Assembly (NCBI RefSeq): GCF_030144855.1
Contig: NC_082712.1
Span: forward strand, 10,044,001 to 10,108,000
Reading direction: 5' to 3'
DNA length: 64,000 bases
Source of the DNA: Hypanus sabinus
Lineage: Eukaryota
Shown here: in pieces, positions 7,987-41,984 of the stretch
Position numbering within the stretch: position 1 is the first letter of the stretch
Layout of the letters: each line of letters begins with the position of its first letter
Translations under genes and position numbers: made by a program
The notes under the pieces: generated by a model
Database searches by the model: none
What the model saw: only the letters and a program-made list of their open reading frames with translations
Told to the model about the DNA's origin: nothing

Positions 7987-8002
7987 TCAGACTCGTCGCT
8001 TT
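7987..8002 (-). CDS. Candidate terminal coding exon (R)KRRV-stop, followed by 3' UTR
   Basis: Strong acceptor ttttgttctgtccccag|A AAG CGA CGA GTC TGA completes the phase-2 codon of the TM exon and gives a basic stop-transfer tail. Other acceptors are not excluded. Confidence 0.45.
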
Positions 8003-11000
8003 CTGGGGACAGAACAAAACGGTTAACACGAACCTTGATCGTTGTACAATGACACCACATCCGATTCCCTCCCCCCAATTCACTAATAATGTTTGAAGGA
8101 ATTTGGATCGAGGCATGAATGGGATATCCCACAGGATAGATTTTATCGTCAGTATCAGTGTATGACAACACAACTGGAGATGAGCTCAAAGATGCATTCA
8201 ATTGGAAACATTACAATGATGTAACAATATAGGTCGTGTTTTTGGCAGTAAGGTGGTCTTAGGCTATAGGATAATATTGATAAAAATGTATGGTGCTTAG
8301 ATTCAGACCGTAAGAGCATGTGAAATAGCATCAGACTTTCGGCATTCATCCCTTCTGCTCTGTTTTTCATCATGGTTCATTTATTATCCCTAACAACCCC
8401 ATTCTCCTATCCTCATCCAGTCATCTTTGATACCCTTACTAATCAAGAATACATCAATCTCTGTTTTAATTATTCCCACAGCCATTTCCGGCAGTAAATT
8501 CCACTGATTCACTACCCTCTGGCTCAGAAAGTTCCTCGGAATATCCTTTCTAAAGCAAAATCCTTCTATTAATGGCAGAGTGAAGTTATTCCTGGCTGTG
8601 ATTCAACTTCTAGGACACAGTCCTTTGAAATACAGATTTCTCAGGATTAATCCTGAATAGAAGGAAGTAGATTAAAAAATCATTGGAGCTAAGTAAATGC
8701 AACGTATTGTGGACAGTAACAGATTGAGGCTGTAATTCAAGGTAGATAAGTCCCATGGTCTAAGGTAGATAAGACCCCTGGTCCTGATGGGATGCATCCC
8801 AAAGTGCTGAAGGAACGGCGGATGTTATAGTAGATGCGTTGATAATCATTTATCAAAAATCTCTAGCCTCTGGGCAGGTTCCGTTGCAATGGAAGACAGC
8901 AAATGTCACGCCACTTTTTTTAAAAAAAAGAATGTAGGCAAAAGATGGGCAACTATAGGCTGGTTAGCTTCATATCTGCAGTGGGGAAAATGCTTGAAGC
9001 TGTCATTAAGGATGAAATAGAGAAACATTTCAAAAGGAGTAATTCAATAAGACAGACGCAGCATGGATTCAGAAAGGGCAGGTCCAGTTTTACAAACTTA
9101 TTGGAGTTCTTTGAGAATGTAATGAGTGCAGTGGATAGACGGGAACAGGTGAATGTCGAATACATGGATTTCCAGAAGATGTTCCATAAGATGCCTCACA
9201 AGAGACTGATAAATAAGATACAGATGCATGGAGTTAGAGGAAGTGTATTGACATGGATAGAGGATTGGTTAACCAGGCAGAGTATTGGATTCAATGGGTG
9301 TGTCCTCTAGTTGGCAGTCAGTGGTGAGTGGGGTGCCACAGGGGTTAGTGCTTGTTCCACAGCTGTTTGCCATCTACATTGATGATTTGGAAGAGGGGAC
9401 TGAGTGTAACGTAGCAAAATTTGCTGATGACTCTACACTGAGTGGAAAAGCAAATTGTACAGAGGGTGTGGAAAGTCTGCAGAGGGATATAGATAGTTTA
9501 ATTGAGTGGGCCAAGGTCTGGCAGATGGAATACAACGTTGGTAAATGTAAGATCATCCACTTTGAATAATAGAAGAGCAGATTATTATTTCAACGGTGAA
9601 AGGTTGCAGCATGCTGTTGTGCAGAGGGACTTGGGAGTGCTTGTTCATGAATTTCAAAAAGTTGGCTTGCAGTCACAACAGGTTATTAAGAAGACAGACG
9701 GAATGTTGGCCTTCATTGCTAGAGGGTTTGAATTTGTGAGCAGGGTGGACATGCTGCAACTATACAGGGTACTGGTCAGGCCGCACCTGGAGTACTGTGT
9801 GCAGTTCTGGTCTCCTTACTTGAGGAAGGATATACTGGCTTCGGATAAAGTGCAGAGGAGGTTCACCAGGTTGATTCAAGGGATGAAGGTGTTGATCTAT
9901 GACGTGAGATTGAGTCGCCTGGGACTATACTCGCTGGAATTCAGAAGAATGAGAGGGGATCTTAGAGAAACATACAAAATTTTCAAAGGGATATATAAAA
10001 TAGAAGTAGGAAAGTGGTCTCCATTGGTAGGTGAGACTAGAACTAGGGCACATTGCCTCAAGATTCAGAGGAGAAGATTTAAGACGGAGATGAGGAGAAA
10101 CTATTTTTCCCATAGAGTGGTGAATCTGTGCAATTCTCTGTGCAGGGAAGCAGTTAAGACTTCTTCACTGAATATATTTAAGAAACAGCTAGATAGGTTT
10201 TTACATCGTAAGCGAATTAAGGGTTATGGGGGAAAGGCAGGTAGATGGAGCTGAGTTTATGGACAGATTAGCCATGATCTTATTGAATGGTGTGGTAGGC
10301 TCAACTGGTCAGATGGCCTACTACTGTTCCTACAACGATCCACTGAGTCTTGACAACCAGCAGCTCAGGGATGTAATCCCAGCCTAATCACACGATGGTT
10401 TACAATGAACAATTAATCTGATAACCGGAGCTTTTTTGGACCTTGGGTGGAAGCCAGAGCACCCAGAGGAAACCAACGTGCACATGGGAAGAGCGTACAT
10501 ACTTTCTAACAAAGGGTGCCAGGTGCTCTAACCTTTTCCTCTAGTTCTGCCGAAGGGTCTTTGCTTGAAAAGCCGACTGTACTTTTTTTCCCACAGATGC
10601 TGTCTGGCCTTCTGAGTTCCTCCAGCATTTTGTGTGTGTTGCTTTAATTTACAGCATCTACAGGTTTTCTCTCGTTTGCTCCTACATATCCATACATTTG
10701 TCTATCATTTAGTGGGTACGTTGAATCCGAAAGGTATCTCAAAATACTAAATAGTCCACAAACTCTTCTGAAGGAGTCACTCTTATGATGCAATGACTAT
10801 TTACTGCGGTGCTCCCAGAAACAGCAAACGACAAGTACTGAGTGGGTCGACTCAAGTATTTCAGCCGGTTCCCAACGTCCACCGACTGTCTGAGTGAATC
10901 AGATTTCAGTCACGTCCCGGCAAGAGCCTTCAGCATTAGTACATACAGTACCTGAGTTTGTCACAGTAGAGAACGGCACCCATCACTAAAAGGGTGAGAG

Positions 11001-14000
11001 TTTTCAGTCCGAGTGGGATACACAACATCAGCACGGCACAAGCGTCTGTCCCTGAAGAGAAAGTGAGAGAGGTCAATCCAGACTCAGGCAGAGAGGGAGA
11101 GACCAATAACGTAGACTGATTAAAATCTGTAGGTGTGTAGATGAATTTATCATTTAGCATATTTTTACCGAAGAAGCTACAGTTGTTAACTCGTGTGTGA
11201 AGGAATAAAAAAAAAGGATATTAATAAGAATTTAGAGATCAGAGTAACAAGAATTAAACATTTGAACAAAAAGTTTTAACCCGTAGTAAGACGGTAGATC
11301 ATACAATATAGGAGCAGGTCTGCACCATTCGGCCCAACGAGTCTTATCCGCCATACTATCATTTCCAATTTATTATGCTTCTCAATCCCATTCTCCTGTC
11401 ATCTCCCATAAAACTTGATGCCCTTTCCAATCAAGAACCTCTCAACCTCCGCTTAAAGACCAAGACTTGACGTTCAGTCGTCTGTGGCAACAAATTCAAC
11501 CTATTCACCATCGTCTGGCTGAAGAAATCCCACCCCCAACTCTGTTCTAAAGGGACGTCGCTCTATCCTGAAGCCACATGCTCTCTGGTGCTGGACTCCC
11601 CCTCTATATAAAACCTTTCTAAATCCACTCCAACTCGTGTTCGGTAGGTTTCAACCAGATCATCCCCGGCCCATTCTGTAACCTCCGCGAGTACAATCCC
11701 CGAGCCAATGAAGGTGTTCATACGTTAACCCTTTCATTCCAGGAGTCATCCTCGAGAACCTTCACTGGATATGTAGAACGTATATAATAACGTAAGTGAT
11801 TGTTGTGTAGTATTTTTACTCAAATGTTCAAACTCTCACTCATTTTTAAAACAAAATTACATATCATTGTCTTTTGGGTTTACCATGTACCCACCGATTT
11901 TCTCTGCTTTTCCATATTATCCCAGATGAACATTTGACAATACCTTACTTAACTCTAGTGAGGGATATTTACTCCATTATTAAATAAAAAGAAGGATAAT
12001 GTATTTCTCTTCTGCAACTTCCAGCTGATTCTCTCAACTTCTCTGTATTCCACTGACTCATTCTCTACGCCGCCTATCCCATTCATCTGCTCCCTTCCCC
12101 ACCTACCCCACCCTCCGTGTGGTGTGACAGCCTAGATTCCTACTCCCCCACCAACCCGGGGCAACTGGAGCTAAAGCTGACCCATCACCAGCGAGGCTGC
12201 AGCCACTGGAACGTCGTGCGATGCGTCTTCCCGTTCCTGCTCCCTTCCTCCCACACGCATCCTCCCCGTACCCTACTGAATGTAGCAATGGTCTCTTACC
12301 TGGTCTGACCCGCAGCCGGATCTCACTCTGGATCACGTGGATAAATGGGGGTTTTACGTGGTGTCTGTAGGATGAATAATCATGCTCACTTTTCCTGAAC
12401 TCAGCCAGGCACAGGTAGCTGAGGCTGTCCTCCACACTCAGCTGCTTTATCTTGGTCGAGGCGTTTCCCAGTTCTGGGTCCCCGACGAGCTCATACCGTG
12501 TCACTCCGTTTTCCGCTGCCCACGATCCATTTCCTTGGTGCCTGAAGGTGACGATGTGTCGGTAGGGTTCCTTCCTCATCCACGTCACAGTGTGTGCGGT
12601 GAGGTTCTGCCGAGGCGCTGTGAACACACAGGGTAACGAGGCCGAAGCTCCCTCGGTTCCAGTCATCACTGAGACACTCTCATTGGGAGCTGAGGGAAGG
12701 ACAGGTGCCAGAATGAATCAGTTAACCCCCACCAATCATGTTTAACCACTGACAAAATTTCCAGTCTACAAAATAATAAAAACTCCCCACAGCACCCTCC
12801 TGAATAAAAACACAACCCATCTGTGTCTCACTAATTGCAAACCAATCAAACAAGAGAAACTCTTTAGAACATAAATCAGTCCCATCGGGCAGGAGGTAGA
12901 GAAGCATAAATCTCACACCACTATGTTCAGGGACAACTAATTCCGTTCAACCATTCAGTTGTTGAACCAATTGACACCAACACAGATCAATGGAGTGTTC
13001 AATCAAGATCTGTCAGTACAATCAAGACCTAGCAGTTCAATCAATCAAGACCTATCAGTACAGTTTAGCAACACTAATCAGTACAGTGTATCAACACTAA
13101 GGCACTGTATTAAAGTGTTTTTTCCTTTGGTACAATTGCGTATTTTCCTGTAAAAATGTAAAGATTCTTGTAATAATTCATTTTTCATTTTAATTAATGA
13201 GTGAGAGTAAAAGATGCATTTCTACCTCTGAGTTCTCCTCACTAAGATAGCATTCTGTTCCCTGTTTACTCTGTACCTCTGCTGCACACTGCATTCACTT
13301 TAAATAATGTGTTATTAACATACTTGTGGGAATATTTTGTTTTATGAGCTGTGTGTGATATATGCCGTGTGAGTGCACTGTGATCCAGAAGAACGTTGTT
13401 TCATTTGCTTGTAAATATGTAAAGTCACATGACAGAAAACTTGAACTTCACTTGAATCTCCTCTGCTCCCTCTCCGGTGTCATAGTTACCGTACTGCAAG
13501 TGTTCAACAACCTGAGCTGGTGTGTTTGACAGGGAATTCTACAGTGAGCCCTCTCCAGTGTAATACTTACTGTACTGAAAGTGTTCAACAGCCTGAGCTG
13601 GTGTGTTTGACAGGGAATTCTACAGTGAACCCTCTCCAGTGTAATACTTACTGTACTGAAAGTGTTCAACAGCCTGAGCTGGTGTGTTTGACAGGGAATT
13701 CTACAGTGAACCCTCTCCAGTGTAATACTTACTGTACTGAAAGTGTTCAACAGCCTGAGCTGGTGTGTTTGACAGGGAATTCTACAGTGAACCCTCTCCA
13801 GTGTAATACTTACTGTACTGAAAGTGTTCAACAACCTGAGCTGGTGTGTTAGAGAAGGAAATCTCCTCTGCTCCCTCTCTGGTGTCATAGTTACTGTACT
13901 GAAACTGTTCAACAGCCTGAGCTGGTGTGTTTGACAGGGAATCCTGCAGTGAACCCTCTCCAGTGTAATACTTACTGTACTGAAAGTGTTCAACAGCCTG

Positions 14001-17000
14001 AGCTGGTGTGTTTGACAGGGAATTCTACAGTGAACCCTCTCCAGTGTAATACTTACTGTATTGAAAGTGTTCAACAGCCTGAGCTGGTGTGTTTGACAGG
14101 GAATTCTACAGTGAACCCTCTCCAGTGTCATACTTACTGTACTGAAAGTGTTCAACAGCCTGAGCTGGTGTGTTTGACAGGGAATTCTACAGTGAACCCT
14201 CTCCAGTGTAATACTTACTGTACTGAAAGTGTTCAACAGCCTGAGCTGGTGTGTTGGACAGGGAATTCTACAGTGAACCCTCTCCAGTGTAATACTTACT
14301 GTACTGAAAGTGTTCAACAACCTGAGCTGGTGTGTTTGACAGGGAATTCTACAGTGAACCTTCTCCTGTGTAATACTTACTGTACTGAAAGTGTTCAACT
14401 GTCATTAAGTGGACGTTGGGAGCGGACAAAAATGCAAGACACAGACACTGAACTACCAGGAACTGGACTAGGCATGAGAAGGAAGCAAGGGAAGCGAGGA
14501 AGAAAGGATGCTGGACATGACAAAGGTCCCGGATGAGACAAGTAATCTGGGCCTGGGCTAGGAATTGACAACGAAAGTGGAACCAGGACATGGAACTGTG
14601 AATTAGGAGCCTGGGCTTGCACTCCGAGCCAGTGACTGGACAAGGACCCAGAACCTGGGTCTTGACTGGAGCTCAGGCTCTAAAACCAGACAAAGACAAG
14701 ATGGCTACAGGATGAGGAAAGGCACAGGATGGGACATGACACTCTTGGACAGGACAAGGGAACCCAGACACAGGACGAGAGAATCCCAGCACCAGGCTGG
14801 GCAAGGTACCTCTGGGCTGGGCGAGCCTGGGTCGAGGGAGAACAGAAACGCAGAACACAGAGCCTGAGTAGGGGAAGAACAGGAATCTAGAGCACCAAGC
14901 CAGGACCCCTCCTTGGGTACAGGACGTAGGGCCAGGACTCATTACACAGAACGCTGAATTCAACGAGTCAGTTCCCAATGCTAGGTAGTGGCAAAACAGC
15001 CAGACCTACCTAGTGAAGGCGTGGACACAGACAGACAGTTCCAAACAGGGCGAGGCTCCCAACACAGGCGATGCAAGGATCCAGTCAGGGCAAGGCGAGG
15101 CAGGGTCCCAGGCGCGGGATGCAGGCCAGGGCTCCAGCCGTAGATTGTAAGGCAGGGCATCAGAGGGAAGGACGGGAACAGTCCAGCCTCAGGGTAACAG
15201 CAATGACGGCTTGACTTACCCAACGAAGGCAAGGGCCAGGAGGGACAGATCCCACCATAGGGTAACAGCAAAGACAGCCTGACTTACCCCACAGAGGCGA
15301 GGACACGAGACCAACAGGACAAACCCACAGAGAGGCAAGGACATGATACTGACGAGACAAACCCCACATAGGCAAGGACAGGATACTGACAAAACAAGTC
15401 AGCAGCCAGCCTCGAACCCAGGGCCACTTATATTCCTGGCCCCAAAACGAGAATCAGGTGCCTATGATTCAAAACCAAATGAGACAAGCAAACGCCGGAA
15501 AACCTGGAGTCTGGAGTACACGGACCGGACCGTGAGCCAAAACGCGGGTTTAAAGGACCGGACCATGACATCAACAGCCTCATCTGATGTGTTTGACAGG
15601 GAATTCTGCAGTAAAAGCTCTCCAGTGTAATACTTACTGTGCTGAAAGTGTTCACCAGCCTGAGCTGATGTGTTTGACAGTGAAATCTAGTGATCACTCT
15701 CCAGTGAATATACTTACTGTGGGAGAAAATTTAAAGCATAATTACTGATTAGGAACCACAGATTTAAGCCATTTTTGCCACGACAGCAATACTGTCTGTT
15801 CTTGGTAAACTGACAACGAACTAAGCGTTGCTAAATATAAGTAAATGAGTCGCGTGTTGCTTGTACTTTAAGAAGGATGGGGTATCTTCTTTTTCTTTGG
15901 AATTATTGTTCTGTAATCTGCCCAACGTTGCAGGCATTAACATTTAAGCTTATTGGTGCTTCGGGTTATCACCTCAGACATGCTGTGAAATTTCTCTATT
16001 CAATTTGTGTGATGAAGTGCTTCTTGTCACGTAGATTTTGACTATAAAATATGAGTGTAATCATCTGTTGGGCAGAGTATCAGAACTCCGTTTTTTAGGA
16101 GTCTGAGCTCTCCATGATATCGGGCTACAATGAGAGCTTTCTGAAGCAACCTCCCTCCGGGTCCGAGTAATACATTTCCGCGACACTTACCATACTGAAG
16201 GTTGGTGTGTTTGACAGGGAATTCTACAGTGAACCCTCTCCAGTGTAATACTTACTGTACTGAAAGTGTTCAACAGCCTGAGCTGGTGTGTTTGACAGGG
16301 AATTCTACAGTGAACCCTCTCCAGTGTAATACTTACTGTACTGAAAGTGTTCAACAGCCTGAGCTGGTGTGTTTGACAGGGAATTCTACAGTGAACCCTC
16401 TCCAGTGTGATACTTACTGTACTGAAAGTGTTCAAGAACCTGAGCTGGTGTGTTTGACATGGAATTCTACAGTGAACCCTCTCCAGTGTAATAGTTTCTG
16501 TACTGAAACTGTTCAACAGCCTGAACTGGTGTGTTTGAGAAGGATTTCTACAATAAACACTCTTCAGTGTAAATACTTAATGTACTGTAAGTGTCCAACA
16601 GCCTGAACCTGTGTGTTTGACAAGAATTTCTACAGTATACCCTGCGTTATCCAAAGATAGGACAGGGAGCTGCTACTGGTTACCTGTGCTGAGAACTACA
16701 GGCATTCTGAATTATACTTTATTAGTTATTTTTTGGCGATTTATAGTGTTTTATGAGCTGTGTGTGACATAGGTTTTGTGAGTCCACCTAGAGCCGGAAG
16801 AAGGTGGTTTCGTTTGGTTCTGTATCTGTGTACAGTCAGATGGCAATAAACTTGAACTTGATTGCTGCTCTTCTGACGCAACGCTCTTTGCCTGTGTTGC
16901 TATGGCAACTGGATTTTCACTGTACCTGTGCAGACACGTAGGCAGACGTGCAATGAAAATCCAACCTGCAGCAGCAAGTAAGTTCAGTTCCACTCCCCTC

Positions 17001-20000
17001 ATTACAGGAAGGATGAGGAAGCTTTCGAGAGGATGTAGAGGAGATCTACCAGGATGCTGCCTGGACCAGAGAGGATGTTTAATGAGGAAAGGTTGAGCGA
17101 GCTGGAGACTTTCTCTTGGGAGTGAAGAATGATGAGAGGTGACTTGATAGAGGTGAACAAGATGATAAGAGGCATAATCGAGAAGACAGCCAGAGATTTT
17201 TCCTGGGGTGGAAATGGCAAATATAAAGGGGCATCATTTTCAGTCGATTGGAAGAAAGTATAGGGGGATGTCAGAGGTAGGTTCATTACACGGTGTGTGG
17301 TGGGTGTTCGAACGCCTCGCCAGCTTTGTGACCGAGGCAGGTACATTTAAAGACATTTTAGAGGCTCGCCCATTTCAAACAGGTCAATGGGTAGAGGCCA
17401 CACTAAGAGTGTTCTGCATGCAGGACGGTGACCAGTGGTGGTCTGTAGGGATCTGTACCAGGTCCCCTCGTTCTTGTGATTTTTATAAGTGACCTGGAGG
17501 AGGTAGTAGAAGGGTGGGTTTGTGTTGAAGACACAAAAGTTGGAGGTGTTGTGGATAGTCTGGTGGGTTGTCAGAGGTTACAGCAGAACATCGATTAGAT
17601 GCAGAACTGGGCTGAGAAGTGGCAGATGGACTTTAACCTAGGTAAGTATGAAGTGGTTCATTTCGGTAGGTCAAATTTGGGGGGGGGGCGGGGAGAGAGA
17701 GAGAGAGCGTGAGAGACTCTGAGACAGGTACACGGATGTTGTAGAAATTGAGGGGTATGTGGTAAGCAAGGGCGAGATTGAACTTGGAGCAGGTTTAAAG
17801 GTCAGCACAACATTGTGGGCTGAAGGGCCTGTATGTTGCTGTTGTTCTATCTGCTGGTGCACATGACAATCACATCTATTTGACATGATTTTCCTGCAAA
17901 ATGTACTTGTAAATTATGAAAAAAAGTTTTCAGGGAGATAAATGTGAAATGATTAGTTTTACAACTCAATGCTTAAACATCGGTCCTCACCTCTCACAGA
18001 CAGATCTGTTAGAACATCCGTTTGAAAGCTGTCAACATTGAGCTCCACCCGGCACCGATACCGACCACCGTCACTCCGCTTCAGACTCTCCACCATTATC
18101 GAGATGTCCCTCTGACTGAGATTCCCCACGAATCCGAACCGCCCTCTTCCAGCCTCCTGTGTTTTAGTATCGCACCAAGATGGGCCGGAACGGGGATATG
18201 TGCACTTAAACATCAGTTTTGTAGCACCTGGTTCCCTCCTGTACCAGATCACGGAGCCGTTCAGGGCGACATCAGGAGGTGGGTGGGTGAAAGTACACGG
18301 TAACACAGCGGAGGTCCCTTTCACCGCAGAGACCACATCAGCACCGGACATTGACCAACCATTGAACGAAAACTCTGCAGAGAGAGAGAGGGAGTGTGAG
18401 AGAGAGAATGAGTGAGAGGAGGAACAGGCATTGGACGATATTTGAACAGCAAATCTGTGGGGGTAAAAGAACATTGAAGTTTTGGGCTTGCATCAGGACT
18501 GAGAGAGGACTGTTGAATAGCCAGAAGAAAAGGAATGGGCAGTCTGAAGGGAATGACGGATTGAGGAGCGGTGAGATAGGAGTCTGATGTGATCGATGGA
18601 TTGAGCAGGGAAGAGTCAGGAGTCTGAGGTGATTGTTAGATTGAAGAGGGGTGAGACTGGAGTCGGAGGTGATTGTTAGATTGAGGAGGGGTGAGACAGG
18701 AGTGATTAATTGATGCATTGAGGAGGGCTGAAAATGAGTCGGTGATTGATGAATTGAGGGGTATTCCAACAGTAGTGTCAGATGATGGATGGATTGAGGA
18801 AGGGAGAGTCAGGAGTCTGAGTCGATTGATGGATTGAGGAGGGGTGAGACTGGATTCTCAGGGGATAGATGGATTGAGGAGGGAAGAGTTAAGAGTTTGA
18901 GGTGACTGAAGTATTGAGCAGACATTATAAAGGAGTCTGGGTTTATTGATAGATTGCTGAGGAGTGAGAGAGGAGTCTCAGGTGATTTTTGGATTGAGGA
19001 GGGGTGAGACATGAGTCTGAGGTGATTGCTTGATAGTGGAGATATGAGGTCGTGGTCTCAGGTGACTGAAGAATTGAGGAGACATGCGACAGGAGACAGG
19101 TGATTGATGCATTGAGGAGGAGTGAGATGAGTCTGAGGTAATTGATGGACTGAGGATGGTGAGACAGGATTCTGAAATGATTGATAGTTTGAGGAGGGAT
19201 GAGCCAGGAGCATTAAGTGACTGATGAATTGAGGATGCGATATGAGTATTGGGTGATTGAGGGACTGAGTAGGAGTGAGACGAGTCTGCGGTGATTGATG
19301 TATTCAGGAGCAGTGAGTCAGGAGTCTGAGGTGATTGGTGGATTGAGAAGGGGTGAGAGGATTCTGGAGTGACTGATAGTTTGAGGAGGGCTGAGGCAGG
19401 ACTATTAAGTGATTGATGAATTGAGGATGCGACATGAGTCTCAGGTGATTGAGGGACTGAGGAGGACTGAGACGAGTCTGAGGTGTTTGATGTATTGAGG
19501 AGGGTTGAGTCTGGAGTCTGAGGTAATTAATGGATTTAAGAGGGCTCATATAGGAGTCTGAGTGAGACAGAGATCTGAGGTGATTGATAAATTTAGAGCG
19601 GTGAGACAGGAGTCAAGGTGATTGATTGATTGCTACAAGGTGAGGCAGGTGTATGAGGTGACTGAAGGATTAAGGAGATGTGAGTCAGGAGTCTGTTGAT
19701 TGATGGATGATGGATTCAAGTCTGAGGTGATGATGGATTGAGGTGTGGTGAAAAGTGCCTGAGGGGAAGTTTGGATCGAGGCGGGAACCGGCAGGAGTCT
19801 GAGCATATTTATGAATTGAGCATGGGTGAGACATGAGTCTGGGGTGATTGATGGTTTGAGGAGGAATCAGACGAGTCTGAAGTAATTGATGGATTGAGGA
19901 GGGATGAAACAGGAGTATGAGGTGATTGATGTATTGTGGAGGGGTGATACAGGAGTCTGAAGTAATTGATTGATTGAGGAAGGGTGAGACTGGAGTCTGT

Positions 20001-23000
20001 GATAAATGATGGATTGAGAGGGGTGAAAGAGAAGTCTGAGATGATTGATGGATTATGGAAGGGAGATACAGGAGACTGAGGTGATTGATGGATTGATGAG
20101 GGTGGAGAAAGGAGTCACGGGTGATTGTTCCATTGATGTGGGGTGAGGCAGGAGTGTAGGTGATTTCTGATTGATGGATTGAGGTGGGGTGAGACAAGCT
20201 TCTGCGATTCTTGATGGATTGATGAGCAGTGAGACGAGTCTCAGGTGATTGATAGAATGAGAAGGCAAAGGATTCTGTGGTGATTGAAGAATTATGGAGG
20301 GTTGAGGCCGGATTCTCATGTGATTAACGGTTTGAGGAAGGGTGAGACAAGGATCTTAAATGATTGATGGATTGAGGAGGAGGGGAGACAGGTTCTGTTG
20401 TGATTTATGGATTTAGGAGGGGTGATTCAGGCGTCTGAGGTAATTGATTAATTGAGAACGTGTGAGATAGGAGGCTGAGATGATTGATGTATTGAGGGGG
20501 GTTGCGATTGGGGTCTCAGGAGGTTGATGAATTGAGGAGGGGTGAGACCAGTGTCTGAGGTGATTGGTTGATTAAGGAGGAGTGAGACATGATTATGAGG
20601 TGATTGAAGGATTGAGTACTGAAGAGACAGGCGTATTGGGTGATTGATGGATTGAGGAGGAGTGAGATGGATGTCTGAGCTGATTGAAGAGATAGAAGTC
20701 TGAAGTGATTGGAAGACTAAGGAGGGATAAGGCAGCAGTCTGAGGTGCCTGAAGGATTGAGGAGTGATGAGATAGGTGTCTGACGTGATTGATGGGTTGA
20801 AGAAGGGTGTGACAGGTGTCTGAGGTAATCGAAGCACTGACAACAGGTGAGACAGAAGTCTGAGGTCATTGATGGTTTGAGGAGGGGTGTGACAGAAGTC
20901 TGCAGTGATTGATGAATTGAGGAGGTGTGGGACAGGCTTTTGAGGGGATTGATGGACTGAAGAGTAGTGAGACAAGTCTGAGGTGATTGATGGATCGAGT
21001 AGGGGAGAGTCAGGAGTCTAAGGTGATTGAAGAGGGGTAAGATAGTACCTTGAAGTGCTTGACGGTTTGCTGAACAGGGAGACTGGAGTCTAAAGTTATT
21101 GATGGATTGAGGATGAGTGAGACAGGAGACTGAGGTGATTGTAGATACAGGAGGGGTGAGGCATTTGTGTGAGGTGACTGGTGGATTGAGGAGGGTTCGG
21201 ACAGGAGTATGAGGTAATTGATGGATTGAGGAGGAATGAGACCAGTCTGAGGTGATTAATGGATGGAAGAGGGTAGAGCCGGAAGTCAGGTGATTGATGG
21301 ATGTACAGGGTTCTCAGATTATTAACTGCAGTGTTAACTGTTAACTGCATACGTATATAAAATGGTTTCTCTGCAGCGTTAGAATGAAATGGCTTCTTTG
21401 TAGGTAACTGATGAGGTAATGATCTGTTTAGTTGAAATGTTTGGGTTATAACTATTGATAACTGAGGAGCTAACCAATGAAAGCAATGGAAGTATGTGTG
21501 GGAACCTGGAGTGAGTGCACGGGATTCTCGGGAGGAGAACCGAAGAGGAAGGACATGCTGGAAGCGCTCTGGTCGACCACCCAGGTTGGTCCAAGGCGGC
21601 GGGCCGAGATCGGAGAAGATCGAATGGTGGACTGAAGACTTCGATAGTTGAGCTCCAACGGTTGTGCACAAATTGATTGACCCCTGATAAGTTTTGACGC
21701 CTTTTTCTTTTCTTTTTATATTGTATCTATTAATTATCTGGTTCCAGTAAGATTTATGAAGTGTACTCTGTAAAACATACATTGTGTGCTGTCTGATATT
21801 GTGTGCGCACATTTGTTTCAGTGTGCGTTACACAGCATCTACGCAAACAAGAGATACAATTTGGCCGGTGTACGGATTTCCCTTAGGCAAACACAAGCCG
21901 ATAGCCCTAGGCGTTACAGATTGGTGAGTGATGAGACAGGAGTCTGAGGTGATTGATGGATTGATGAGGGTTGAGACAGGAGTCTAAGGTGATTGATGGA
22001 TTGAGGAGCGTTGAGGTATGAGTCTGAGGTGATCGATGGATTGAGGATAGGTGAGACACTAATCTGAAGTGAATGATGGATTGAGGAGCACTGAGAAGTA
22101 TCTGAGGTGTGGATTGGTGAGGGTGAGAGTGGAGCCCGAGGTGATTGCTGGATTGAGGAGAGGTTAGACATGTGTCCGGGTGATTGATCGATTGAGTAGG
22201 GGTGAGAGAGGTGTTTGAGTTTATTGATGCATTGAGCAAGGTTGAGACAGAGGTCAGCGGTGATTGATGGACTGAGGACAGGTGAGAGAGGAATCTGTGG
22301 TGATAGAGGAGGGGTGGGAAAGGATTCTGAGGTGATTGATGTATTGAGGAGGGATGAGACTGAAGTCTGAGTTGATAGATGGATTGAGGAGGTGTGCGGC
22401 AGGAGTCTGTGATTGATGGATTAAGGAAGGTTACCCTTTTGAAGTAGGTGGGGCCTCTGACTGCAGCAGTGAGGGATTGAAGATATCCTTCATCTTTCCC
22501 AACAGTTGATCGACACAGGCTTTCAGCGATCTTCCAGATACACCAGCAGGGTCTGACAACTAAATGATCAGTAATGGATAGTCAGGACTGGGAACAGGCT
22601 GTGATCCATAGGAGGGTCCAGGCTGGGGGGGTTTATATGTGCAATAACGGATACTCAGGAGCGGGCTACATGCAGCGGTCTGGTGCTGTAGAGACCAGAG
22701 TGGGGGTTATGTCGGAATCAGAATTAGAGTCAGATTTAATATAGAAAACAATGGAATAGACAACGAGATTGCATCACTGGCGTATGTCGTGAAATTTGTT
22801 GTTTTGCAGCAGCAGCAGCAGTACAAGGCAATGTATAATAATAAAATCTATAAATTACAGTCAGTGCATATAAAATAAGAAAAGGAAATTAAATAACTGA
22901 TTAGCAGGACCACGAAGGTAGTAATTTAGAGATTACTGCCTGTGCCCCTGACAGTGAGTATAGGAATAGAGTGAAGAGGAGGATAAACCTGTGGCTAACA

Positions 23001-26000
23001 GATTGGAGCAGGGGGCAGGGATACAGATTTCTGGATCATTGCCACCTCTTTTGGGGCAGGCGGGACCTGTACAAAAAGGACACCAATATCCTTCCGAAAG
23101 CTTTTGGGGAGAGTTTAAACTAGAGTTACTGGGGGGTGGGAACCGAAATGAAGAGACGGTGGAGGAGACGGTTGGTGCACAAATAGAAAAAGCTTGGAGA
23201 CAGTCTGAGAGGGAGGATAGGCAGGTGATCGTGCAGCAACTTGCACAGACCGATGGTTTGAGATGTGTCTATTTTAATGCAAGGAATATTATGAACAAAG
23301 CGGATGAGCTTAGGGCATGGTTCAGTACATGGATCTATGATCCATTACAGAGACCTGGATGGCTCAGGCACAGGAATGGTTACTTAGAGTGCCAGGCTTT
23401 AGATGTTTCAGAGAGGACAGGAAGGGAGGCAAAAGAGGTAGAGGCATGGCACTGTTGATCAGAGATAGTGTCACGGCTGCAGCAAAGGAGGAAGTCATGG
23501 AGGGATTCTCTACGGAGTACCTGTGGGTGCTTGTTTATAGACCACCCAATAGTGACAGGGATATCAAGGAGCAGATATGGAGACAGATTCTGGAAAGGTA
23601 TAATAATAACAGCGTTGGCATAGTGGGAGATTTTAATTTCCTGAATATCGATTGGTTCTCCCTAGAGCAAGGGGTTTAGATGGGGTGGAGTTTATGAGGT
23701 GTTTTCAGGAAGGTTTCTTGACACAATCTGTAGATAAGACCACCAGAGGAGAAATGATCTGGTATTGGGAAATGAACCTGGTCAGGTGTCAGATCTCTCA
23801 GTAAGGGAGCATTTTGTAGATTGTGATCACAATTCTATCTCTTTTACCACAGCATTGGAGAGAGGTAGGAACAGGCAAGTTAGGAAAACGTATAATTGGA
23901 GTAAGGGGGAATATGTGGCTATCAGACAGGAATTGAGAAGCATAAATTGGAAACAAATGTCCGCAGGGAAACGTACGGAAGAAATATGGCAAATATTCAG
24001 GGGGTATTTGCGTGGGGTTCTGAGTAGGTACGATGCAATGAGACATGGAAAGGATGGTATGGTACTAGATCGGTGGTGCACAAAGGCTGTTGTAAATATA
24101 GTCAAGAAGAAAAGAAGAGCTTACGAAAGGTTCAACAAACTAGGTAATGATATAAATCTTGAAGTTTGTATGGCTATTAGGAAGGAGCTTATGACTGGAA
24201 ATAGGAAATCCAGAAGTGGCCACGAGAAGGCCTTGGAGGACAGGATTCAGGAAAACCACAAGGCATTCTGCAAGTATGTGAAAAGCAAGAGGATAAGTCG
24301 TGAGGTTCTGAATCCTTTCCAAAGCTTCCAGAACTTTCCTTTAATGCAGCACCCAGAACAGCACAGAAATCTCCTAATGTGGACTCCGCAAAGCTGCAAC
24401 ATTTGTATATTCAAGAAGTCGATGAAATATACCACAGCCAGAGCTTAATTCCGACCCCCGAGCACACTGTCCAACATAATTCACAGGAGAAGGATCCGGA
24501 GCAGAAACCCTGGCACGACACACAGACATGAGTCTGACCAGCATTTATTGATCACGTGTGTCGTTGTATCGCACCAGGAGCGGCCGGGACTGGGAAATGG
24601 GCAGTTAAACTTCAGCTTTTTTAGCACCTGATTCCACTCTGTAGCAGATCACGGAGCTGAACAGAGTGTGGGTGAAAGTAAGTGAGAGTGTGTTGTGTGT
24701 CTGAGAGAGAGCGGAGAGAGTGTGCCTGTGAGACTGTGATAGAGAGAAGAACGTGAGAAAGGGAGAGAGGGAGAGTGGGAGAGGGAGATGAGTAGGGGTA
24801 TAGATGTGAAGAGGGAGACGAGGAGAAGGACAGAGGGAGACAGCTAGAGAGACAGACAGACAGAAAGACACAGAGAGATTGAGGGAAAGCGAGAGAGAAA
24901 TCACAGAGCAGCAGGTAAACAGACACAGAACCCCACTGAACCCAGCCCCGTGTTGTCGTCCCACACAGTATCGCAATGTATCGGGGGATCTGGTTTGGAC
25001 ATCGAACCAGCGGAGTGGGTTACAGGCTGGATTCTGACGTGCGATACGTCCGGTTGGGAGTTATATGTATCATAACGGATTCCTTGCGTCAGGTGCAGGA
25101 AGGGTGTTCTGATGTGCGAGTAGGTGGGGATAGTTAATGTGTAATAACCGATACCCGAGAGTAGGAGGCGTCGGGTTGGGTGTTAAGGGTATAATAACGG
25201 ATTCCTGGGAGTGGGTTGCAGTCTGGGGTCTGACGTGGGAGGGGCGGGTGGGAGTGGTAGTTATATGTAGAAAAACCGATATCGGGGAACGGATTACAGG
25301 ATGAGATCGCATAGTTTCAGAACTTTATCGTTGTCTGCTTCTCGGATCTGTAGGCTTTTGCAATCTTGCCGCTTCGGAGAGGAAGTGGTTGGAGATTCTG
25401 GAGCATCGGTTACTGATAAGAGAGTTCTTGGAATTCCCTCAGAGTAACGGAAAGATTAGAGTAGCGTACGAGGACATTCAGCCCATTGTTCACACTGGCC
25501 CAATGTAAGAACAACCCACGCAGTCCCACTCCCCCATCCTGTTCCCACCGCCCCGTGAATTCCGTTTCAGACACTTGCCCCGTTCCCCTTTTCAACACTG
25601 CCTTCCTATCCCGGCCCACGTTGTACTCTAAATACGAGGAATTTATGTCTCCAGACACCTCTGTAGATCTATGGCGAATCTTTTTGATTCTATAAATTCA
25701 TTACTTTCCCCGTCCACCAATGGGACAGCCTCGTTCAGTCTGCATGCTTCATAATTTTAATACTCATCCCGAACCAGGTTTCCATCTGACCTCCGCTGCT
25801 GTAACCAGATCATCCAGAAGCTGGGTTAGAAGCAGGAGGCTGCTCGGCGCCCCTAATTCTACCGCCATTGAATAAGTTGATGGCTGATCTGTTTAAATTC
25901 AACACTCTATCCTTTTGCACCGCCGTAAGCCGCACCCCCCCCCCCTTGTTTATCGGGGGTTCCACTCATAGGTACGAAACCCTGGGATAGACGGGTGTGT

Positions 26001-26254
26001 TTCTCCAATTGCCCGACCACCAGATCACCTCCACCATAGTGAATGTGGTGTGTCAATAAGATGGACCAGTCTCCCAACATCCCCTCACTCCCTCGGTTCA
26101 ACCCAACGCTCAAACAGATGCAAAGCTGCCACAGCGGACACCCGAAAATTCAGATGAGGTAAGGAGATGATCAGGACAATGGAAAACACTTACTGTATCC
26201 CTGGACTGAGAGGGATAGCAGAACCGTGCAGAGACAAACCAGGAGAGAGAGCAT
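7987..26254 (-). CDS. SIGLEC15: Spliced gene model: Siglec-15-like type I membrane receptor (signal peptide - IgV - IgV - TM with Lys - short tail), about 316 aa
   Basis: Exons 26254-26194 (61 nt), 18374-17991 (384), 12689-12300 (390), 11051-10952 (100) and 8002-7987 (13 nt plus stop). All have GT-AG boundaries, phases are 1/1/1/2, and the joined frame has no stops. V1 resembles human Siglec-15 (WSM..VSA..G..AVLPCTFTHP; Y.CRVE) and the TM has LGLKTL (cf. LGFKAL). The symbol means 'like'; orthology is not proven. The last exon is the least certain part. Confidence 0.75.
8720..10330 (+). mobile_element. 5'-truncated CR1 LINE (RT to 3' UTR), frameshifted; lies in the TM-tail intron
   Basis: GNYRLVSFISAVGKMLE, QHGFRKGRS, GVPQGLVLVPQLF, KFADD, VRPHLEYCVQFWSP. 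Confidence 0.92.
10545..10680 (+). mobile_element. Abundant short retroelement tail (gaagggtct...gatgctg...gagttcctccagcattttgtgtgtgttgc)
   Basis: The same family occurs at about 2615, 4600, 26460, 30895, 33090 and 43800. Confidence 0.7.
10952..11051 (-). CDS. Exon 4: transmembrane segment with intramembrane lysine
   Basis: Acceptor ctttctcttcag|GG and donor AG|gtactg. Encodes GTDACAVLMLCIPLGLKTLTLLVMGAVLYCDKLR, in phase with V2. Confidence 0.85.
11300..11770 (-). mobile_element. CR1 3' fragment in the V2-TM intron
   Basis: Reverse complement of the CR1 3' end also seen at 330-880 and 61430-61900. Confidence 0.7.
12300..12689 (-). CDS. Exon 3: second V-set Ig domain (no essential Arg)
   Basis: Acceptor tccttccctcag|CT and donor G|gtaaga, phase 1/1. 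Encodes PNESVSVMTGTEGASASLPCVFTAP...VTWMRKEP...RYELVGDP...EDSLSYLCLAEF...IRLRVRP. Confidence 0.9.
14400..15570. mobile_element. Solo LTR, 1171 bp
   Basis: TGTCA...TGACA termini; exact 5-bp TSD TCAAC (14395-14399 and 15571-15575); no coding capacity. Confidence 0.85.
15718..16185. mobile_element. Solo LTR, 468 bp
   Basis: TGTGGGAGAAAAT...ATTTCCGCGACA imperfect inverted termini; 5-bp TSD CTTAC (15713-15717 and 16186-16190). Confidence 0.75.
17000..17830 (+). mobile_element. CR1 fragments
   Basis: RFTRMLPG-like and KWQMDFN-like decayed motifs. Confidence 0.7.
17991..18374 (-). CDS. SIGLEC15: Exon 2: Siglec-15-like V-set Ig domain with essential Arg
   Basis: Acceptor ctctctctctgcag|AG and donor G|gtgagg. 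Encodes FSFNGWSMSGADVVSAVKGTSAVLPCTFTHP...IWYRREP...FKC...SWCDT...GRFGFVGN...DGGRYRCRVEL...DLSVR: B- and F-strand Cys, C-strand Trp, an extra Cys pair and the CRVE Arg. Confidence 0.9.
18560..22430. repeat. Degenerate about 40-bp G/A-rich satellite just upstream of the V1 acceptor
   Basis: Consensus gtgattgatggattgaggaggggtgagacaggagtctgag, repeated over about 3.2 kb and interrupted at 21.3-21.9 kb. Confidence 0.92.
21302..21918 (+). mobile_element. Probable solo LTR inserted in the 40-bp satellite
   Basis: Unique block starting TGTAC and ending GTTACA; TSD degenerate (gat/gatt). Confidence 0.6.
22930..24310 (+). mobile_element. CR1 fragment (ORF1 3' end plus ORF2 endonuclease)
   Basis: CVYFNARNIMNKADELRAW, YRPPNS, VGDFN motifs; paralogous copy at 40270-41725. 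Confidence 0.85.
24560..24682 (-). pseudogene. Pseudo-V exon remnant A (homologous to the middle of V1)
   Basis: actttcacccac...ctccgtgatctgctacagagtggaatcaggtgctaaaaaa...tggtgcgatac aligns with V1 TFTH...SVIWYRREPGATK...WCDT. The 5' part and acceptor are missing, indels are present, and the 3' half is absent. Confidence 0.75.
24683..24910. repeat. GA/CT-rich low-complexity tract in front of pseudo-V A (counterpart at 42118-42320)
   Basis: Direct reading of the sequence. Confidence 0.9.
26194..26254 (-). CDS. Exon 1 (leader A): signal peptide MLSLLVCLCTVLLSLSVQGY
   Basis: gcgATG start, hydrophobic 20-mer ending VQG, consensus donor A|GTAAGT. Phase 1 joins V1 in frame (A+AG=Lys). Confidence 0.85.
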
Positions 26255-26289
26255 CGCTAACCCTGCAGTCTGGTGTCCTTTTTTGTTTC

Positions 26290-26430
26290 CCTAAAGTGAA
26301 ATGCAGAAGTTGCATGAAGTGTTCGTCATTTCCTCACAGATCACCCCACCCTTATTATAACAGTTTATTAGATAAATTACTCTTTTCTAACTAAAGAAAT
26401 TAGAACTTCCTGACTTCTGACAGGAAGTCC
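26290..26430 (-). promoter_or_regulatory. Putative promoter/5' region of leader A: IRF-like AAAGTGAAA, TGACG next to GAGGAA, inverted ETS pair
   Basis: aaagtgaaa at about 26293-26301; cgtca/tttcctc at 26324-26335; ACTTCCTG-8 nt-CAGGAAGT at 26405-26428. All lie within 180 nt upstream of the ATG. These are motif matches only. Confidence 0.4.
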
Positions 26431-27315
26431 ATGATGCACACAGGGTTGGTGTGTCAAATCACAAACAACAGAAAACTTACAGATGCTGGAAATCTAATCA
26501 GTACATACAAAATGCTGGAGGAACTCAACAGGGCAGGCAGCATCAATGGAAAGGAGTACAGTCGATGTTCGATATGTTGCAGGAACTGACCCTTGTGCCT
26601 TCAGCTATGACCACCTGAGAACGGAAAAGGACTCTGCGAAGTGTGGAGAGTTCAAACGTGTTTGTCGAAAACCGAACCTGAGAGGGCAAAGACTAACAAG
26701 AAAATTTCAGTGGAGGCTCGCAAAATATTTCAAACTCATTTACTCGCCTGTGTACCTTTGGGGTGTGTCTGGAGAATTTCGATCATTTATATGCAAGAAT
26801 TTCGAATTCCCACAAGCGACTTTAAGTGAGGGCAGCTCTGACAAAGTATCCTACTTCCTTGCAGGGATGAAGGTCTAATGATTGGTGGTAATCAGTGTTA
26901 ATGGCTGGCTAGAGTCATCATGATTCTCGCTCTGCCGTTTGTGTGATCTTAGTTTTTGTCATTCCAACCTGAGTGTATCGTCTCCCTCAAATATCTCCAG
27001 ACTAATTCCCATGTTGAACAAAATATAAGCGATAGGTAAAAATGAAACAGTACGTACTTAAAACCACCGACTATATATTTCACTTCTATGCCGCAGAACT
27101 CTTGATGTCCTTTCATATAAAAGCCTCTTACCTACCCCTCCCATTCATTTTTTCCCCAGAAACACACAAATACATTCACAAACAAGTATAATATTATAGT
27201 TCCCCGAAACGAGTAAACACAAACACCCCAATGGCATCCCGTACCGAACGGTCGGGCAGTTACAAACTTTCGCAGCCGGTGATTAGTCTCAATGAACTCA
27301 ATGTTTGGTCGCATG

Positions 27316-41725: not shown

Positions 41726-41984
41726 CTGAATCCTCTCCAACGGTTCCGTATCTTTCCTTTAATGTAGCACCCAAAACAGCACAGTAATCTCCAAACTTGG
41801 ACTCTGCAAAGTTTTATAAATTAGCAACTTTTTTCTATTCAAGAACGCTATCAAATATGCCACAGCCAGGGTTTCATCCCTACCCCCGACCACACTGTCC
41901 AACATAATTCACAGGAGAGGGATCCGGAGCAGAAAACCCCGGCACAGCACACAGTCATGAGACCGACCAACATTTATTGATCAC

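What the first reader, a model, noticed from the sequence alone, without database searches (positions are those of the whole stretch)
7987..26254. Siglec-15-like receptor with a non-canonical V-V-TM(Lys) architecture (no C2-set domain)
Seen in sequence: five canonical exons join into a stop-free product of about 316 aa, comprising a signal peptide, two V-set domains, a Lys-containing TM and a very short tail. The 1.25-kb V2-TM intron contains only a CR1 piece and AT-rich DNA, with no C2 exon visible. Established: mammalian and teleost Siglec-15 is V + C2 + TM(Lys), and Siglecs normally have one N-terminal V-set domain. Inference: this is a lineage-specific, probably chondrichthyan, remodelled activating lectin-type receptor in which a duplicated V exon replaced the C2 exon. 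It may define a separate receptor family.
Basis: partly seen in the sequence, partly recalled or inferred. Interest (0 to 1): 0.85.

Follow-up and report, generated by a model that had tools for sequence, protein, structure and literature searches.

The report
Ray Siglec-15-like two-V activating receptor
The window holds an intact gene for a small immune-cell receptor related to Siglec-15 that carries two variable-type domains and no constant-type domain; it is one copy of a large, apparently undescribed shark-and-ray family that arose by losing a domain, not by swapping one.

Summary
Five minus-strand exons with canonical splice sites and matching phases join into a 316-aa protein: signal peptide, V1, V2, Lys-bearing transmembrane helix, five-residue tail. 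Both domains are Pfam V-set, and the best solved-structure match of both is the human Siglec-15 V domain. No C2 exon or relic is present.

The gene is not a one-off. It aligns end to end with RefSeq models from stingrays, mantas, skates, sawfish and sharks. This "family A" has many paralogues per species, including forms with an uncharged helix and ITIM tails. The scan noted the same architecture at six or more other places in this genome.

Chondrichthyans, including elephant shark, also carry a V-V-C2-TM(Lys) Siglec-15 gene ("family B"). In a domain tree, V2 of A and V2 of B form one clade (support 100/98). So V2 predates the A/B split and A lost the C2 exon.

V1 keeps the Siglec-15 Arg and extra Cys pair; V2 has Leu at that position. 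The likely function, inferred only, is sialoglycan binding by V1 and signalling through a DAP12-type adaptor.

I found no paper describing the family. It is a new variant of a known kind, of moderate interest.

The parts
26194..26254 (-). Exon 1: ATG and signal peptide (MLSLLVCLCTVLLSLSVQGY + 1 base), phase-1 donor ACA|gtaagt
   Evidence: Sequence read; model. It aligns with the leaders of P0007, P0008 and P0006. The only other leader-like exon in the window is at 43638-43579.
17991..18374 (-). Exon 2: V1, a Siglec-15-type V-set domain with the CRVE Arg and four Cys
   Evidence: Pfam V-set E 2.7e-12. The best solved-structure hit is human Siglec-15 7zoz, E 9e-17, with WSM, LPCTFTHP and YxCRVE aligned. 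Clade A_d1 has support 97/96.
12300..12689 (-). Exon 3: V2, a diverged Siglec-15-type V-set domain with Leu at the Arg position, two Cys only, and a long F-G loop
   Evidence: Pfam V-set E 5e-12. The best solved-structure hit is Siglec-15 7zoz, E 8.9e-10; the next best is 1e-4. Clade A_d2 has support 100/99 and is sister to B_d2 at 100/98. Residue table.
10952..11051 (-). Exon 4: short stalk and transmembrane helix with Lys (LCIPLGLKTLTLLVMGAVLY), phase-2 donor
   Evidence: The same IPLGLK motif occurs in more than 25 family-A proteins.
7987..8002 (-). Exon 5: last four codons (KRRV) and TGA
   Evidence: Homologues end ...DKLRKRRD or ...DKLRKRQD.
24544..24757 (-). Truncated relic of a V1-type exon inside intron 1. 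It keeps only the FTHP..WCDT middle part, is frameshifted, and has no acceptor or 3' half.
   Evidence: tblastn; 81% nucleotide identity to 18257-18158; DNA alignment.
22430..27251 (-). Block of upstream region + leader + V relic + LINE piece, which has a second copy at 39818-44584
   Evidence: blastn 75-83% identity over about 4.8 kb.
39818..44584 (-). Upstream paralogous copy of that block: a second intact-looking leader (43638-43579, MPSLRVCLYTVLLSVSVQGY) and a second V relic (42132-41985). No V2 or TM exon follows it.
18541..22427 (.). 40-bp minisatellite filling most of intron 1
   Evidence: Tandem Repeats Finder; GC skew.
13468..16643 (.). Two arrays of an 81-bp satellite in intron 2 (13468-14399 and 16203-16643)
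11296..11767 (.). Dispersed-repeat (LINE 3'-end-like) piece in the 1248-nt V2-TM intron; no Ig exon there
8924..10251 (+). Reverse-transcriptase fragment of a LINE in intron 4
   Evidence: Pfam RVT_1 E 2e-14.

Best explanation
The locus is an intact member of a multigene family found across sharks and rays, which I call family A. Its members are type-I membrane receptors derived from the Siglec-15 lineage. They consist of a signal peptide, a membrane-distal V1, a membrane-proximal V2, a transmembrane helix with a central Lys, and a tail of about five to eleven residues.

Shown here:
- The gene structure.
- The V-set nature of both domains and their Siglec-15 affinity.
- Conservation of the architecture in many species.
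- V2 is the same domain as the second V of the chondrichthyan V-V-C2-TM(Lys) Siglec-15 genes (family B). The C2-less form therefore arose by loss of the C2 exon from a V-V-C2 ancestor.

Inferred, not shown:
- V1 keeps the Arg and the Cys pattern that human Siglec-15 needs for sialic-acid binding, so V1 is probably the sialoglycan-binding head.
- V2 lacks the Arg and varies less between paralogues, so it probably serves as a stalk or secondary contact.
- The buried Lys probably recruits a DAP12/DAP10-type ITAM adaptor, as in Siglec-15. This would make the protein the activating partner of ITIM-bearing relatives in the same family.
For: Gene model: canonical splice sites, consistent phases and a 316-aa open product.

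Domains: V-set for both. Siglec-15 V is the top solved-structure hit for both, at 9e-17 and 8.9e-10. An AlphaFold model of the 316-aa homologue P0007 (pLDDT 79.9) shows two nine-strand domains and a helix at 282-313. Its best structural matches are two-V proteins: JAML, scFvs and pIgR.

Family: 69 elasmobranch proteins match V2. More than 25 of them share the V1-V2-IPLGLK-short-tail layout.

Family B: V-V-C2-TM(Lys) proteins occur in Mobula, Hypanus, Pristis, skates, five sharks and Callorhinchus. In seven species they sit on the same chromosome-sized contig as family A.

Tree: A_d2+B_d2 has support 100/98, and each of the four domain groups is monophyletic. Holding A_d1+A_d2 together is disfavoured, with delta lnL 20.4 and AU p 0.030.

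Residues: the Arg is kept in 20 of 21 bony-vertebrate V domains, 15 of 23 A_d1 (including the window) and 0 of 23 A_d2. The extra Cys pair is kept in 23 of 23 A_d1.

Variation: V1 differs more than V2 among paralogues, 53.2% against 58.8% mean identity, with V2 higher in 178 of 253 pairs.

ITIM tails (VIYAEV, VTYAAI/V, VIYAAV) occur in relatives P0018, P0043, P0064, P0066, P0078 and P0079.

The roles of R143 and the TM Lys in Siglec-15 are taken from PMC7226832.
Against: - There is no transcript or protein evidence for this locus. The homologues are automatic RefSeq predictions.
- Intron 1 is 7.8 kb and contains a dead V relic. The leader block is duplicated, so leader usage is uncertain.
- The family evolves by birth and death, so an intact reading frame does not prove expression.
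- The AU test is only marginal (p 0.030), and I named the hypothesis after seeing a quick tree.
- Deep nodes joining A_d1, B_d1 and bony-vertebrate V domains are weak (65-88). One-to-one orthology to SIGLEC15 is therefore open.
- Ligand binding and adaptor pairing are inferred from conserved residues only.
- I did not check that a DAP12 gene exists in rays.
Confidence: 0.75

Rival explanations
1. One reading: a lineage-specific remodelling in which a recently duplicated V exon took the place of the C2 exon of a V-C2-TM Siglec-15 gene.
For: V2 is Siglec-15-like, with 7zoz as its best solved-structure hit. It is only 27% identical to V1, so on sequence alone it could be an old copy of V1. No C2 is present.
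Against: V2 is orthologous to the second V of genes that still carry the C2 domain, including the one in Callorhinchus (support 100/98). So the gain of V2 and the loss of C2 were separate events, and V2 came first. A clade of A_d1+A_d2 is disfavoured (AU p 0.030).
Confidence: 0.08
2. The five exons do not make one working gene. The leader belongs to a decayed gene unit (leader + dead V), and V1-V2-TM is a leaderless or unexpressed remnant in a birth-and-death cluster.
For: A truncated V relic sits 1.5 kb after the leader, as it does in the duplicated upstream block. Introns are swollen by satellites and LINEs. A scan note reports a nonsense-disabled V exon about 20 kb beyond the window (unchecked).
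Against: All five exons are open, with good splice sites and matching phases. The leader-V1 junction (QGY|K-FSFNGWSM) matches RefSeq models such as P0008 (QGYNWSFNGWSM). The relic lacks an acceptor and its 3' half, so it is unlikely to be spliced in. No other leader lies nearer to V1.
Confidence: 0.15
3. The gene belongs to the CD300/TREM/pIgR-like immune receptors of cartilaginous fish (skate MDIRs) rather than to the Siglec-15 lineage.
For: MDIRs are multigene families of activating and inhibitory V-domain receptors described in skate (PMC3031540). Some RefSeq names among the relatives read 'polymeric immunoglobulin receptor-like'. pIgR appears among the structural matches.
Against: V1 scores 9e-17 against Siglec-15 but only about 7e-5 against pIgR. 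The WSM / LPCTFTHP / CRVE motifs and the PLGxK helix are Siglec-15 signatures. MDIR sequences could not be fetched for a direct comparison.
Confidence: 0.03

Closest known systems
Siglec-15 of bony vertebrates (human structure 7zoz; V-C2-TM(Lys), DAP12/DAP10-associated)
   Same: The N-terminal V domain is the best sequence match (E 9e-17, about 40% identity to a mammalian sequence). It shares the CRVE Arg, the extra Cys pair, the transmembrane PLGxK Lys and the lack of a signalling tail.
   Different: The window gene has a second V-set domain where Siglec-15 has a C2-set domain. Its tail is much shorter (5 aa against about 50). It belongs to a multigene family rather than being a single conserved gene.
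Chondrichthyan V-V-C2-TM(Lys) 'sialic acid-binding Ig-like lectin 15' (family B; e.g. Mobula hypostoma P0096, Callorhinchus milii P0109)
   Same: The two-V head has an orthologous Arg-less V2 (clade support 100/98). Both have a Lys helix and a short tail. Both sit on the same chromosome in seven species.
   Different: Family B keeps the C2 domain and has a different helix motif (LIPLIKF). It has roughly one activating gene per species. In 8 of 14 sequences its V1 has lost the Arg, and it has lost the extra Cys pair.
CD33-related Siglecs and other paired activating/inhibitory receptor families (Siglec-5/14, KIR, NITR)
   Same: All are tandemly expanded. Lys/Arg-helix activating members sit beside ITIM members. 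The ligand-binding head evolves faster, and the Arg is sporadically lost.
   Different: This family derives from the Siglec-15 stem, not the CD33 stem. It uses V-V rather than V-C2n.
JAML (junctional adhesion molecule-like; V-V-TM)
   Same: JAML is the top structural match of the two-domain model (Foldseek E 2e-15). Both have two V-type domains in tandem on a single-pass membrane protein.
   Different: Identity is only 17% and TM-scores are 0.35-0.45. JAML has a long signalling tail. The resemblance is in architecture only.

Membership tests
Siglec-15 (SIGLEC15) | N-terminal V-set domain most similar to the Siglec-15 V domain | tested here: met
   7zoz_A is the best solved-structure hit, E 9.1e-17. 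The next best (CD33) is 2.5e-8.
Siglec-15 (SIGLEC15) | Essential Arg on the F strand (human R143, motif C-R-V-E) and conserved extra Cys pair | tested here: met
   V1 reads RYRCRVEL and has four Cys. The role of R143 is taken from PMC7226832.
Siglec-15 (SIGLEC15) | One C2-set domain between the V domain and the membrane | tested here: not met
   The second domain is V-set. It has nine strands in the model of homologue P0007. tblastn with 14 C2 domains finds nothing in the window; the best hit, E 0.03, is V1 itself.
Siglec-15 (SIGLEC15) | Lys in the transmembrane helix | tested here: met
   The helix reads LCIPLGLKTLTLLVMG.
Siglec-15 (SIGLEC15) | Sialic-acid binding and DAP12/DAP10 association | not testable with these tools
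   These need glycan-binding and co-precipitation assays.
Siglec-15 (SIGLEC15) | One-to-one orthology or synteny with the SIGLEC15 locus | tested here: inconclusive
   Deep nodes of the domain tree have support of only 65-88. The window holds only repeats besides this gene. Chromosome coordinates of relatives could not be fetched.
Elasmobranch V-V-TM(Lys) family (family A, unnamed) | Colinear SP-V1-V2-IPLGLK helix-short tail; both domains inside the family's clades | tested here: met
   End-to-end alignment with P0004, P0006, P0007 and P0008. A_d1 has support 97/96 and A_d2 has 100/99, with the window inside both.
Chondrichthyan V-V-C2-TM(Lys) Siglec-15 (family B) | V1-V2-C2 ectodomain with LIPLIKF helix | tested here: not met
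   There is no C2 domain. V1 and V2 fall outside the B clades.
MDIR / CD300 / pIgR-like receptors | V domain of CD300/pIgR type | tested here: not met
   pIgR scores about 7e-5 against 9e-17 for Siglec-15. Direct comparison with skate MDIR sequences was not possible.

The most novel reading that the evidence does not exclude
In sharks and rays the Siglec-15 lineage is not the single conserved V-C2 gene known from bony vertebrates. It has instead radiated into a large paired activating/inhibitory receptor system, a functional counterpart of the mammalian CD33-related Siglecs that arose independently from the Siglec-15 stem.

Within it, the C2-less family A (this gene) has kept the sialic-acid-binding Arg in V1. 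The structurally canonical C2-bearing gene has lost the Arg in most elasmobranchs. If so, canonical sialoglycan sensing has moved to the expanded family.

The two-V head would date to before the split of chimaeras from sharks and rays.
Probability: 0.4. Interest if true: 0.7.

Novelty: new variant of a known kind. Interest (0 to 1): 0.55.

Why it matters
Siglec-15 is treated as one of the few Siglecs conserved across vertebrates, with a fixed V-C2-TM(Lys) plan. It is also a drug target in bone disease and cancer.

This locus and its relatives show a different picture in cartilaginous fish:
- The lineage carried an extra, Arg-less V domain early on.
- It then lost the C2 domain in one branch.
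- That branch expanded into dozens of activating and inhibitory genes.

This gives three things:
- A natural experiment on what the second domain of Siglec-15 does.
- A second, independent example of a Siglec family evolving as paired receptors.
- A set of candidate innate immune receptors for elasmobranchs, whose non-rearranging receptors are poorly known.

The genes are already in public automatic annotation under mixed names ('sialic acid-binding Ig-like lectin 15', 'uncharacterized', 'pIgR-like', 'HAVCR1-like'). I found no paper describing them, so the value lies in recognising and naming the family, not in this single locus.

Tried and rejected
- I searched for a C2 exon or relic with 14 C2 domains from families A and B and from bony vertebrates. 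Nothing was found.
- I searched for ITIM or long-tail exons of relatives in the window. None were found; only the exon-5 region matched, in another frame, the tail of a Mobula isoform.
Names and taxa therefore came from the search for homologous proteins instead.
- The look-up of encoding contigs gave no record for P0091, P0081 or P0096. For P0008 it gave a place without DNA or coordinates. Exon structures and gene order in other species could not be compared.
- Both ESM Atlas look-ups returned only generic Ig clusters at phylum level.
- Six literature searches found nothing on Siglec-15 or V-V receptors in cartilaginous fish. The teleost Siglec paper (PMC7226832) and the whale shark genome paper (PMC8455134) do not treat them.
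- One outgroup, P0171, attached by a very long branch inside the tree. I left it out of the final tree.
- The spliced 316-aa product has no reference, so I did not send it to the remote search or fold tools. I used single exons and the 316-aa homologue P0007 instead.
- The first homologue search could only see proteins of 112-357 aa, which is why family B appeared only later.
Full report
**1. What is in the sequence**

The gene lies on the minus strand. Reading the reverse complement and assembling the exons in a script gives five exons:

| Exon | Coordinates | Length | Splice signals | Phase |
|---|---|---|---|---|
| Leader | 26254-26194 | 61 nt | donor ACA\|gtaagt | 1 |
| V1 | 18374-17991 | 384 nt | ctgcag\| ... 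GAG\|gtgagg | 1 |
| V2 | 12689-12300 | 390 nt | cctcag\| ... CAG\|gtaaga | 1 |
| TM | 11051-10952 | 100 nt | cttcag\| ... CAG\|gtactg | 2 |
| Tail | 8002-7987 | 16 nt | ccccag\|, codons KRRV, TGA | - |

Pfam calls both Ig exons V-set, at 2.7e-12 and 5e-12, with nearly full profile coverage. The V2-TM intron is 1248 nt. It holds a dispersed-repeat piece and no Ig-like frame. A tblastn search with 14 C2 domains of Siglec-15 relatives finds nothing anywhere in the window. The one limit is that no transcript data were available.

**2. Affinity of the two domains**

Against all solved structures, the best hit for both domains is the V domain of human Siglec-15 (7zoz).
- V1 scores E 9.1e-17, with the next hit, CD33, at 2.5e-8. 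The WSM, LPCTFTHP and YxCRVE motifs are aligned.
- V2 scores E 8.9e-10, with the next hit at 1e-4.

V1 keeps the F-strand Arg (RYRCRVEL) and four Cys. V2 reads SYLCLAEF, with Leu at the Arg position, and has only the two canonical Cys. The helix LCIPLGLKTLTLLVMG has a central Lys, like the PLGxK helix of bony-vertebrate Siglec-15.

In human Siglec-15, R143 is needed for sialic-acid binding and the helix Lys is needed for DAP10/DAP12 pairing. This is summarised in PMC7226832.

**3. The gene is one of a family**

A search with V2 returned 69 proteins, all from elasmobranchs:
- Stingrays: Hemitrygon akajei (up to 86% identical) and Hypanus sabinus.
- Mantas, skates, sawfish and an electric ray.
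- Sharks: Heterodontus, Hemiscyllium, Chiloscyllium, Rhincodon, Heptranchias and Pristiophorus.

They are RefSeq predictions of about 290-350 aa. Their names are mixed: 'sialic acid-binding Ig-like lectin 15', 'uncharacterized', 'pIgR-like' and 'HAVCR1-like'.

The sequences and a domain scan show the same layout in more than 25 of them: signal peptide, V1, V2, IPLGLK helix and a tail of about 11 aa. The window's product aligns end to end with Mobula P0007 (316 aa), Mobula P0008 (315 aa) and Hypanus P0004, which ends ...YCDKLRKRRD. This also validates the tiny fifth exon.

Each species has many members on a single chromosome-sized contig. The same family includes members with an uncharged helix and tails carrying ITIM motifs (VIYAEV, VTYAAI/V, VIYAAV). 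It is therefore a paired activating/inhibitory family. I call it family A.

No identical protein was returned, so this genome's own gene seems not to be in the database. By similarity and tree position the host is a myliobatiform ray, probably near Dasyatidae. This is an inference.

Earlier notes of this scan list the same V-V-TM(Lys) architecture at six or more other places on the same piece of this genome, from 36 kb before the window to 3 Mb beyond it. I did not check those notes.

**4. A second chondrichthyan family changes the history**

The exhaustive search with V1 and two follow-up searches revealed family B. Its members run V1-V2-C2-TM(Lys, helix MLCLIPLIKFLLLL)-short tail, at about 400 aa.
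- There is roughly one such gene per species.
- It occurs in Mobula, Hypanus, Hemitrygon, Pristis, Leucoraja, Rhinoraja, Cetorhinus, Heterodontus, Chiloscyllium, Mustelus and Rhincodon, and in the chimaera Callorhinchus milii (P0109).
- Inhibitory long-tail variants also exist.
- In seven species, family A and family B proteins come from the same chromosome-sized contig.

Bony vertebrates have V-C2-TM(Lys). Extra V domains occur in lungfish, gar and a characiform, and each pairs with its own neighbour in the tree, so they are independent duplications.

**5. Domain tree**

I built a tree of 100 V domains with IQ-TREE (LG+C20+F+G4, 129 columns).

| Group | Support (UFBoot/SH-aLRT) |
|---|---|
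| A_d1 | 97/96 |
| A_d2 | 100/99 |
| B_d1 | 99/97 |
| B_d2, including Callorhinchus | 99/90 |
| Bony-vertebrate V | 92/86 |
| A_d2 + B_d2 | 100/98 |

Forcing A_d1 and A_d2 into one clade costs 20.4 log-likelihood units (AU p = 0.030). That test is marginal, and I framed it after seeing a quick tree.

The second V domain therefore existed before families A and B separated. It existed before chimaeras split from sharks and rays, provided the Callorhinchus domain is correctly placed.

The C2 domain of family B is homologous to the C2 of bony-vertebrate Siglec-15 (phmmer hits).

Relations among A_d1, B_d1 and the bony-vertebrate V are weakly resolved (65-88). Which chondrichthyan family is the strict orthologue of SIGLEC15 stays open.

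**6. Residues and rates**

Counts at the Arg column:

| Group | Arg kept | Other residues |
|---|---|---|
| Bony vertebrates | 20 of 21 | |
| A_d1 (window has Arg) | 15 of 23 | |
| A_d2 | 0 of 23 | Leu in 21 |
| B_d1 | 5 of 14 | Leu in 8, all of them activating elasmobranch genes |
| B_d2 | 1 of 14 | His in 11 |

The extra Cys pair is kept in all A_d1 and all bony-vertebrate V domains. It is lost in A_d2, B_d1 and B_d2. Family A's V1 is thus the most Siglec-15-like head in elasmobranchs, more so than that of the C2-bearing gene.

Among family-A paralogues, V1 is less conserved than V2. Mean identity is 53.2% against 58.8%, and V2 is higher in 178 of 253 pairs. The pairs are not independent. 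This is the pattern expected if V1 is the ligand-binding head.

**7. Structure**

An AlphaFold2 model of the 316-aa homologue P0007, built with 46 family members, has mean pLDDT 79.9 and pTM 0.73. It shows two beta-sandwich domains. The second has nine strands, including C' and C'', and a long, poorly defined F-G loop. A helix spans residues 282-313.

Foldseek against the PDB ranks two-V proteins first: JAML (E 2e-15), single-chain Fvs and pIgR. This fits a V-V ectodomain but shows no closer kinship, as identity is only 14-19%.

**8. Surroundings**

The window is otherwise repeat-rich.
- Reverse-transcriptase fragments lie at four places.
- A 40-bp minisatellite fills intron 1 (18541-22427).
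- An 81-bp satellite lies in intron 2.

A 4.8-kb block at 27251-22430 holds the upstream region, the leader, a V relic and a LINE piece. It is duplicated at 44584-39818 with 75-83% identity.

Both copies carry an intact-looking leader exon. Each leader is followed 1.5 kb later by a truncated V1 relic. The relic keeps only the middle third of the exon, is frameshifted, and lacks an acceptor and its 3' half.

No V2 or TM exon follows the upstream copy. The leader at 26254 is the nearest one to V1. Its junction matches the homologues (QGY|KFSFNGWSM against QGYNWSFNGWSM), but whether it is the one used cannot be decided here.

**9. Mechanism**

Shown: the gene structure, the domain types, the family membership and the orthology of V2.

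Inferred from conserved residues and from what is established for Siglec-15:
- V1 binds sialylated glycans through the Arg.
- V2 acts as a stalk or secondary surface.
- The Lys recruits a DAP12/DAP10-type ITAM adaptor.
- The five-residue tail does not signal.
- The protein is the activating counterpart of ITIM-bearing relatives.

I did not verify that rays have DAP12.

**10. Novelty and score**

The proteins are already in public automatic annotation. Six literature searches found no description of Siglec-15 relatives in cartilaginous fish. Closed-access reviews could not be searched.

Skate MDIRs, which are CD300/pIgR-like (PMC3031540), are a named elasmobranch multigene receptor family. I could not compare them directly. 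The far stronger match of V1 to Siglec-15 than to pIgR makes identity with them unlikely.

I rate the finding a new variant of a known kind. It is real and of moderate interest. It is one copy among many, and the evolutionary explanation needed correcting.

Noticed in passing
window 43579-43638 (-) and 41985-42132 (-); block 39818-44584: There is a second leader exon (MPSLRVCLYTVLLSVSVQGY, 80% identical to the first) followed by a second truncated V1 relic. Both are part of a 4.8-kb duplicate of 22430-27251. No V2 or TM exon follows, so this looks like a truncated gene copy or a possible alternative promoter.
   Followed up: partly
window 24544-24757 (-): A dead V1-type exon relic lies inside intron 1. 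Only the FTHP..WCDT middle third is recognisable. Its 5' part is replaced by CT-rich low-complexity DNA, it has a frameshift, and it has no 3' half.
   Followed up: yes
window 18541-21302 and 21932-22427: A 40-bp G-rich minisatellite (about 70 + 13 copies, 64-70% matches) makes up most of intron 1. It causes the strong GC skew (0.4-0.5) at 18-24 kb.
   Followed up: partly
window 13468-14399 and 16203-16643: An 81-bp satellite lies in intron 2, with 11.5 copies (94% matches) and 5.4 copies (91% matches). It produces long spurious open frames on both strands.
   Followed up: partly
window 8924-9307 (+), 30358-30993 (+), 49969-50958 (+), 58096-58599 (-): These are LINE reverse-transcriptase fragments (Pfam RVT_1, E 1e-11 to 4e-19). 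No other cellular gene was recognised in the window.
   Followed up: partly
related proteins P0096, P0213, P0215, P0217, P0219, P0220, P0221, P0223: In the C2-bearing elasmobranch 'Siglec-15' (family B), the V1 Arg is replaced by Leu (CLVD/CLVN/CLVE) and the extra Cys pair is lost. Callorhinchus and Mustelus keep the Arg. Neither V domain of these proteins then has the canonical sialic-acid Arg.
   Followed up: partly
window 7886-7983 (-) compared with P0016: The 49-aa tail of a Mobula hypostoma isoform matches the window's exon-5 region read in another frame (…SISLLHSGCGYF). In the window that frame is closed by a stop. Some paralogues therefore reach a longer tail by a frame or acceptor shift in the last exon.
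   Followed up: no
related proteins P0091/P0233 (Protopterus), P0234 (Lepisosteus), P0098 (Metynnis): Siglec-15 genes of lungfish, gar and a characiform carry 2-4 tandem V domains in front of the C2 domain. In the tree each set pairs with itself, so V-domain duplication happened repeatedly and independently in this lineage.
   Followed up: partly
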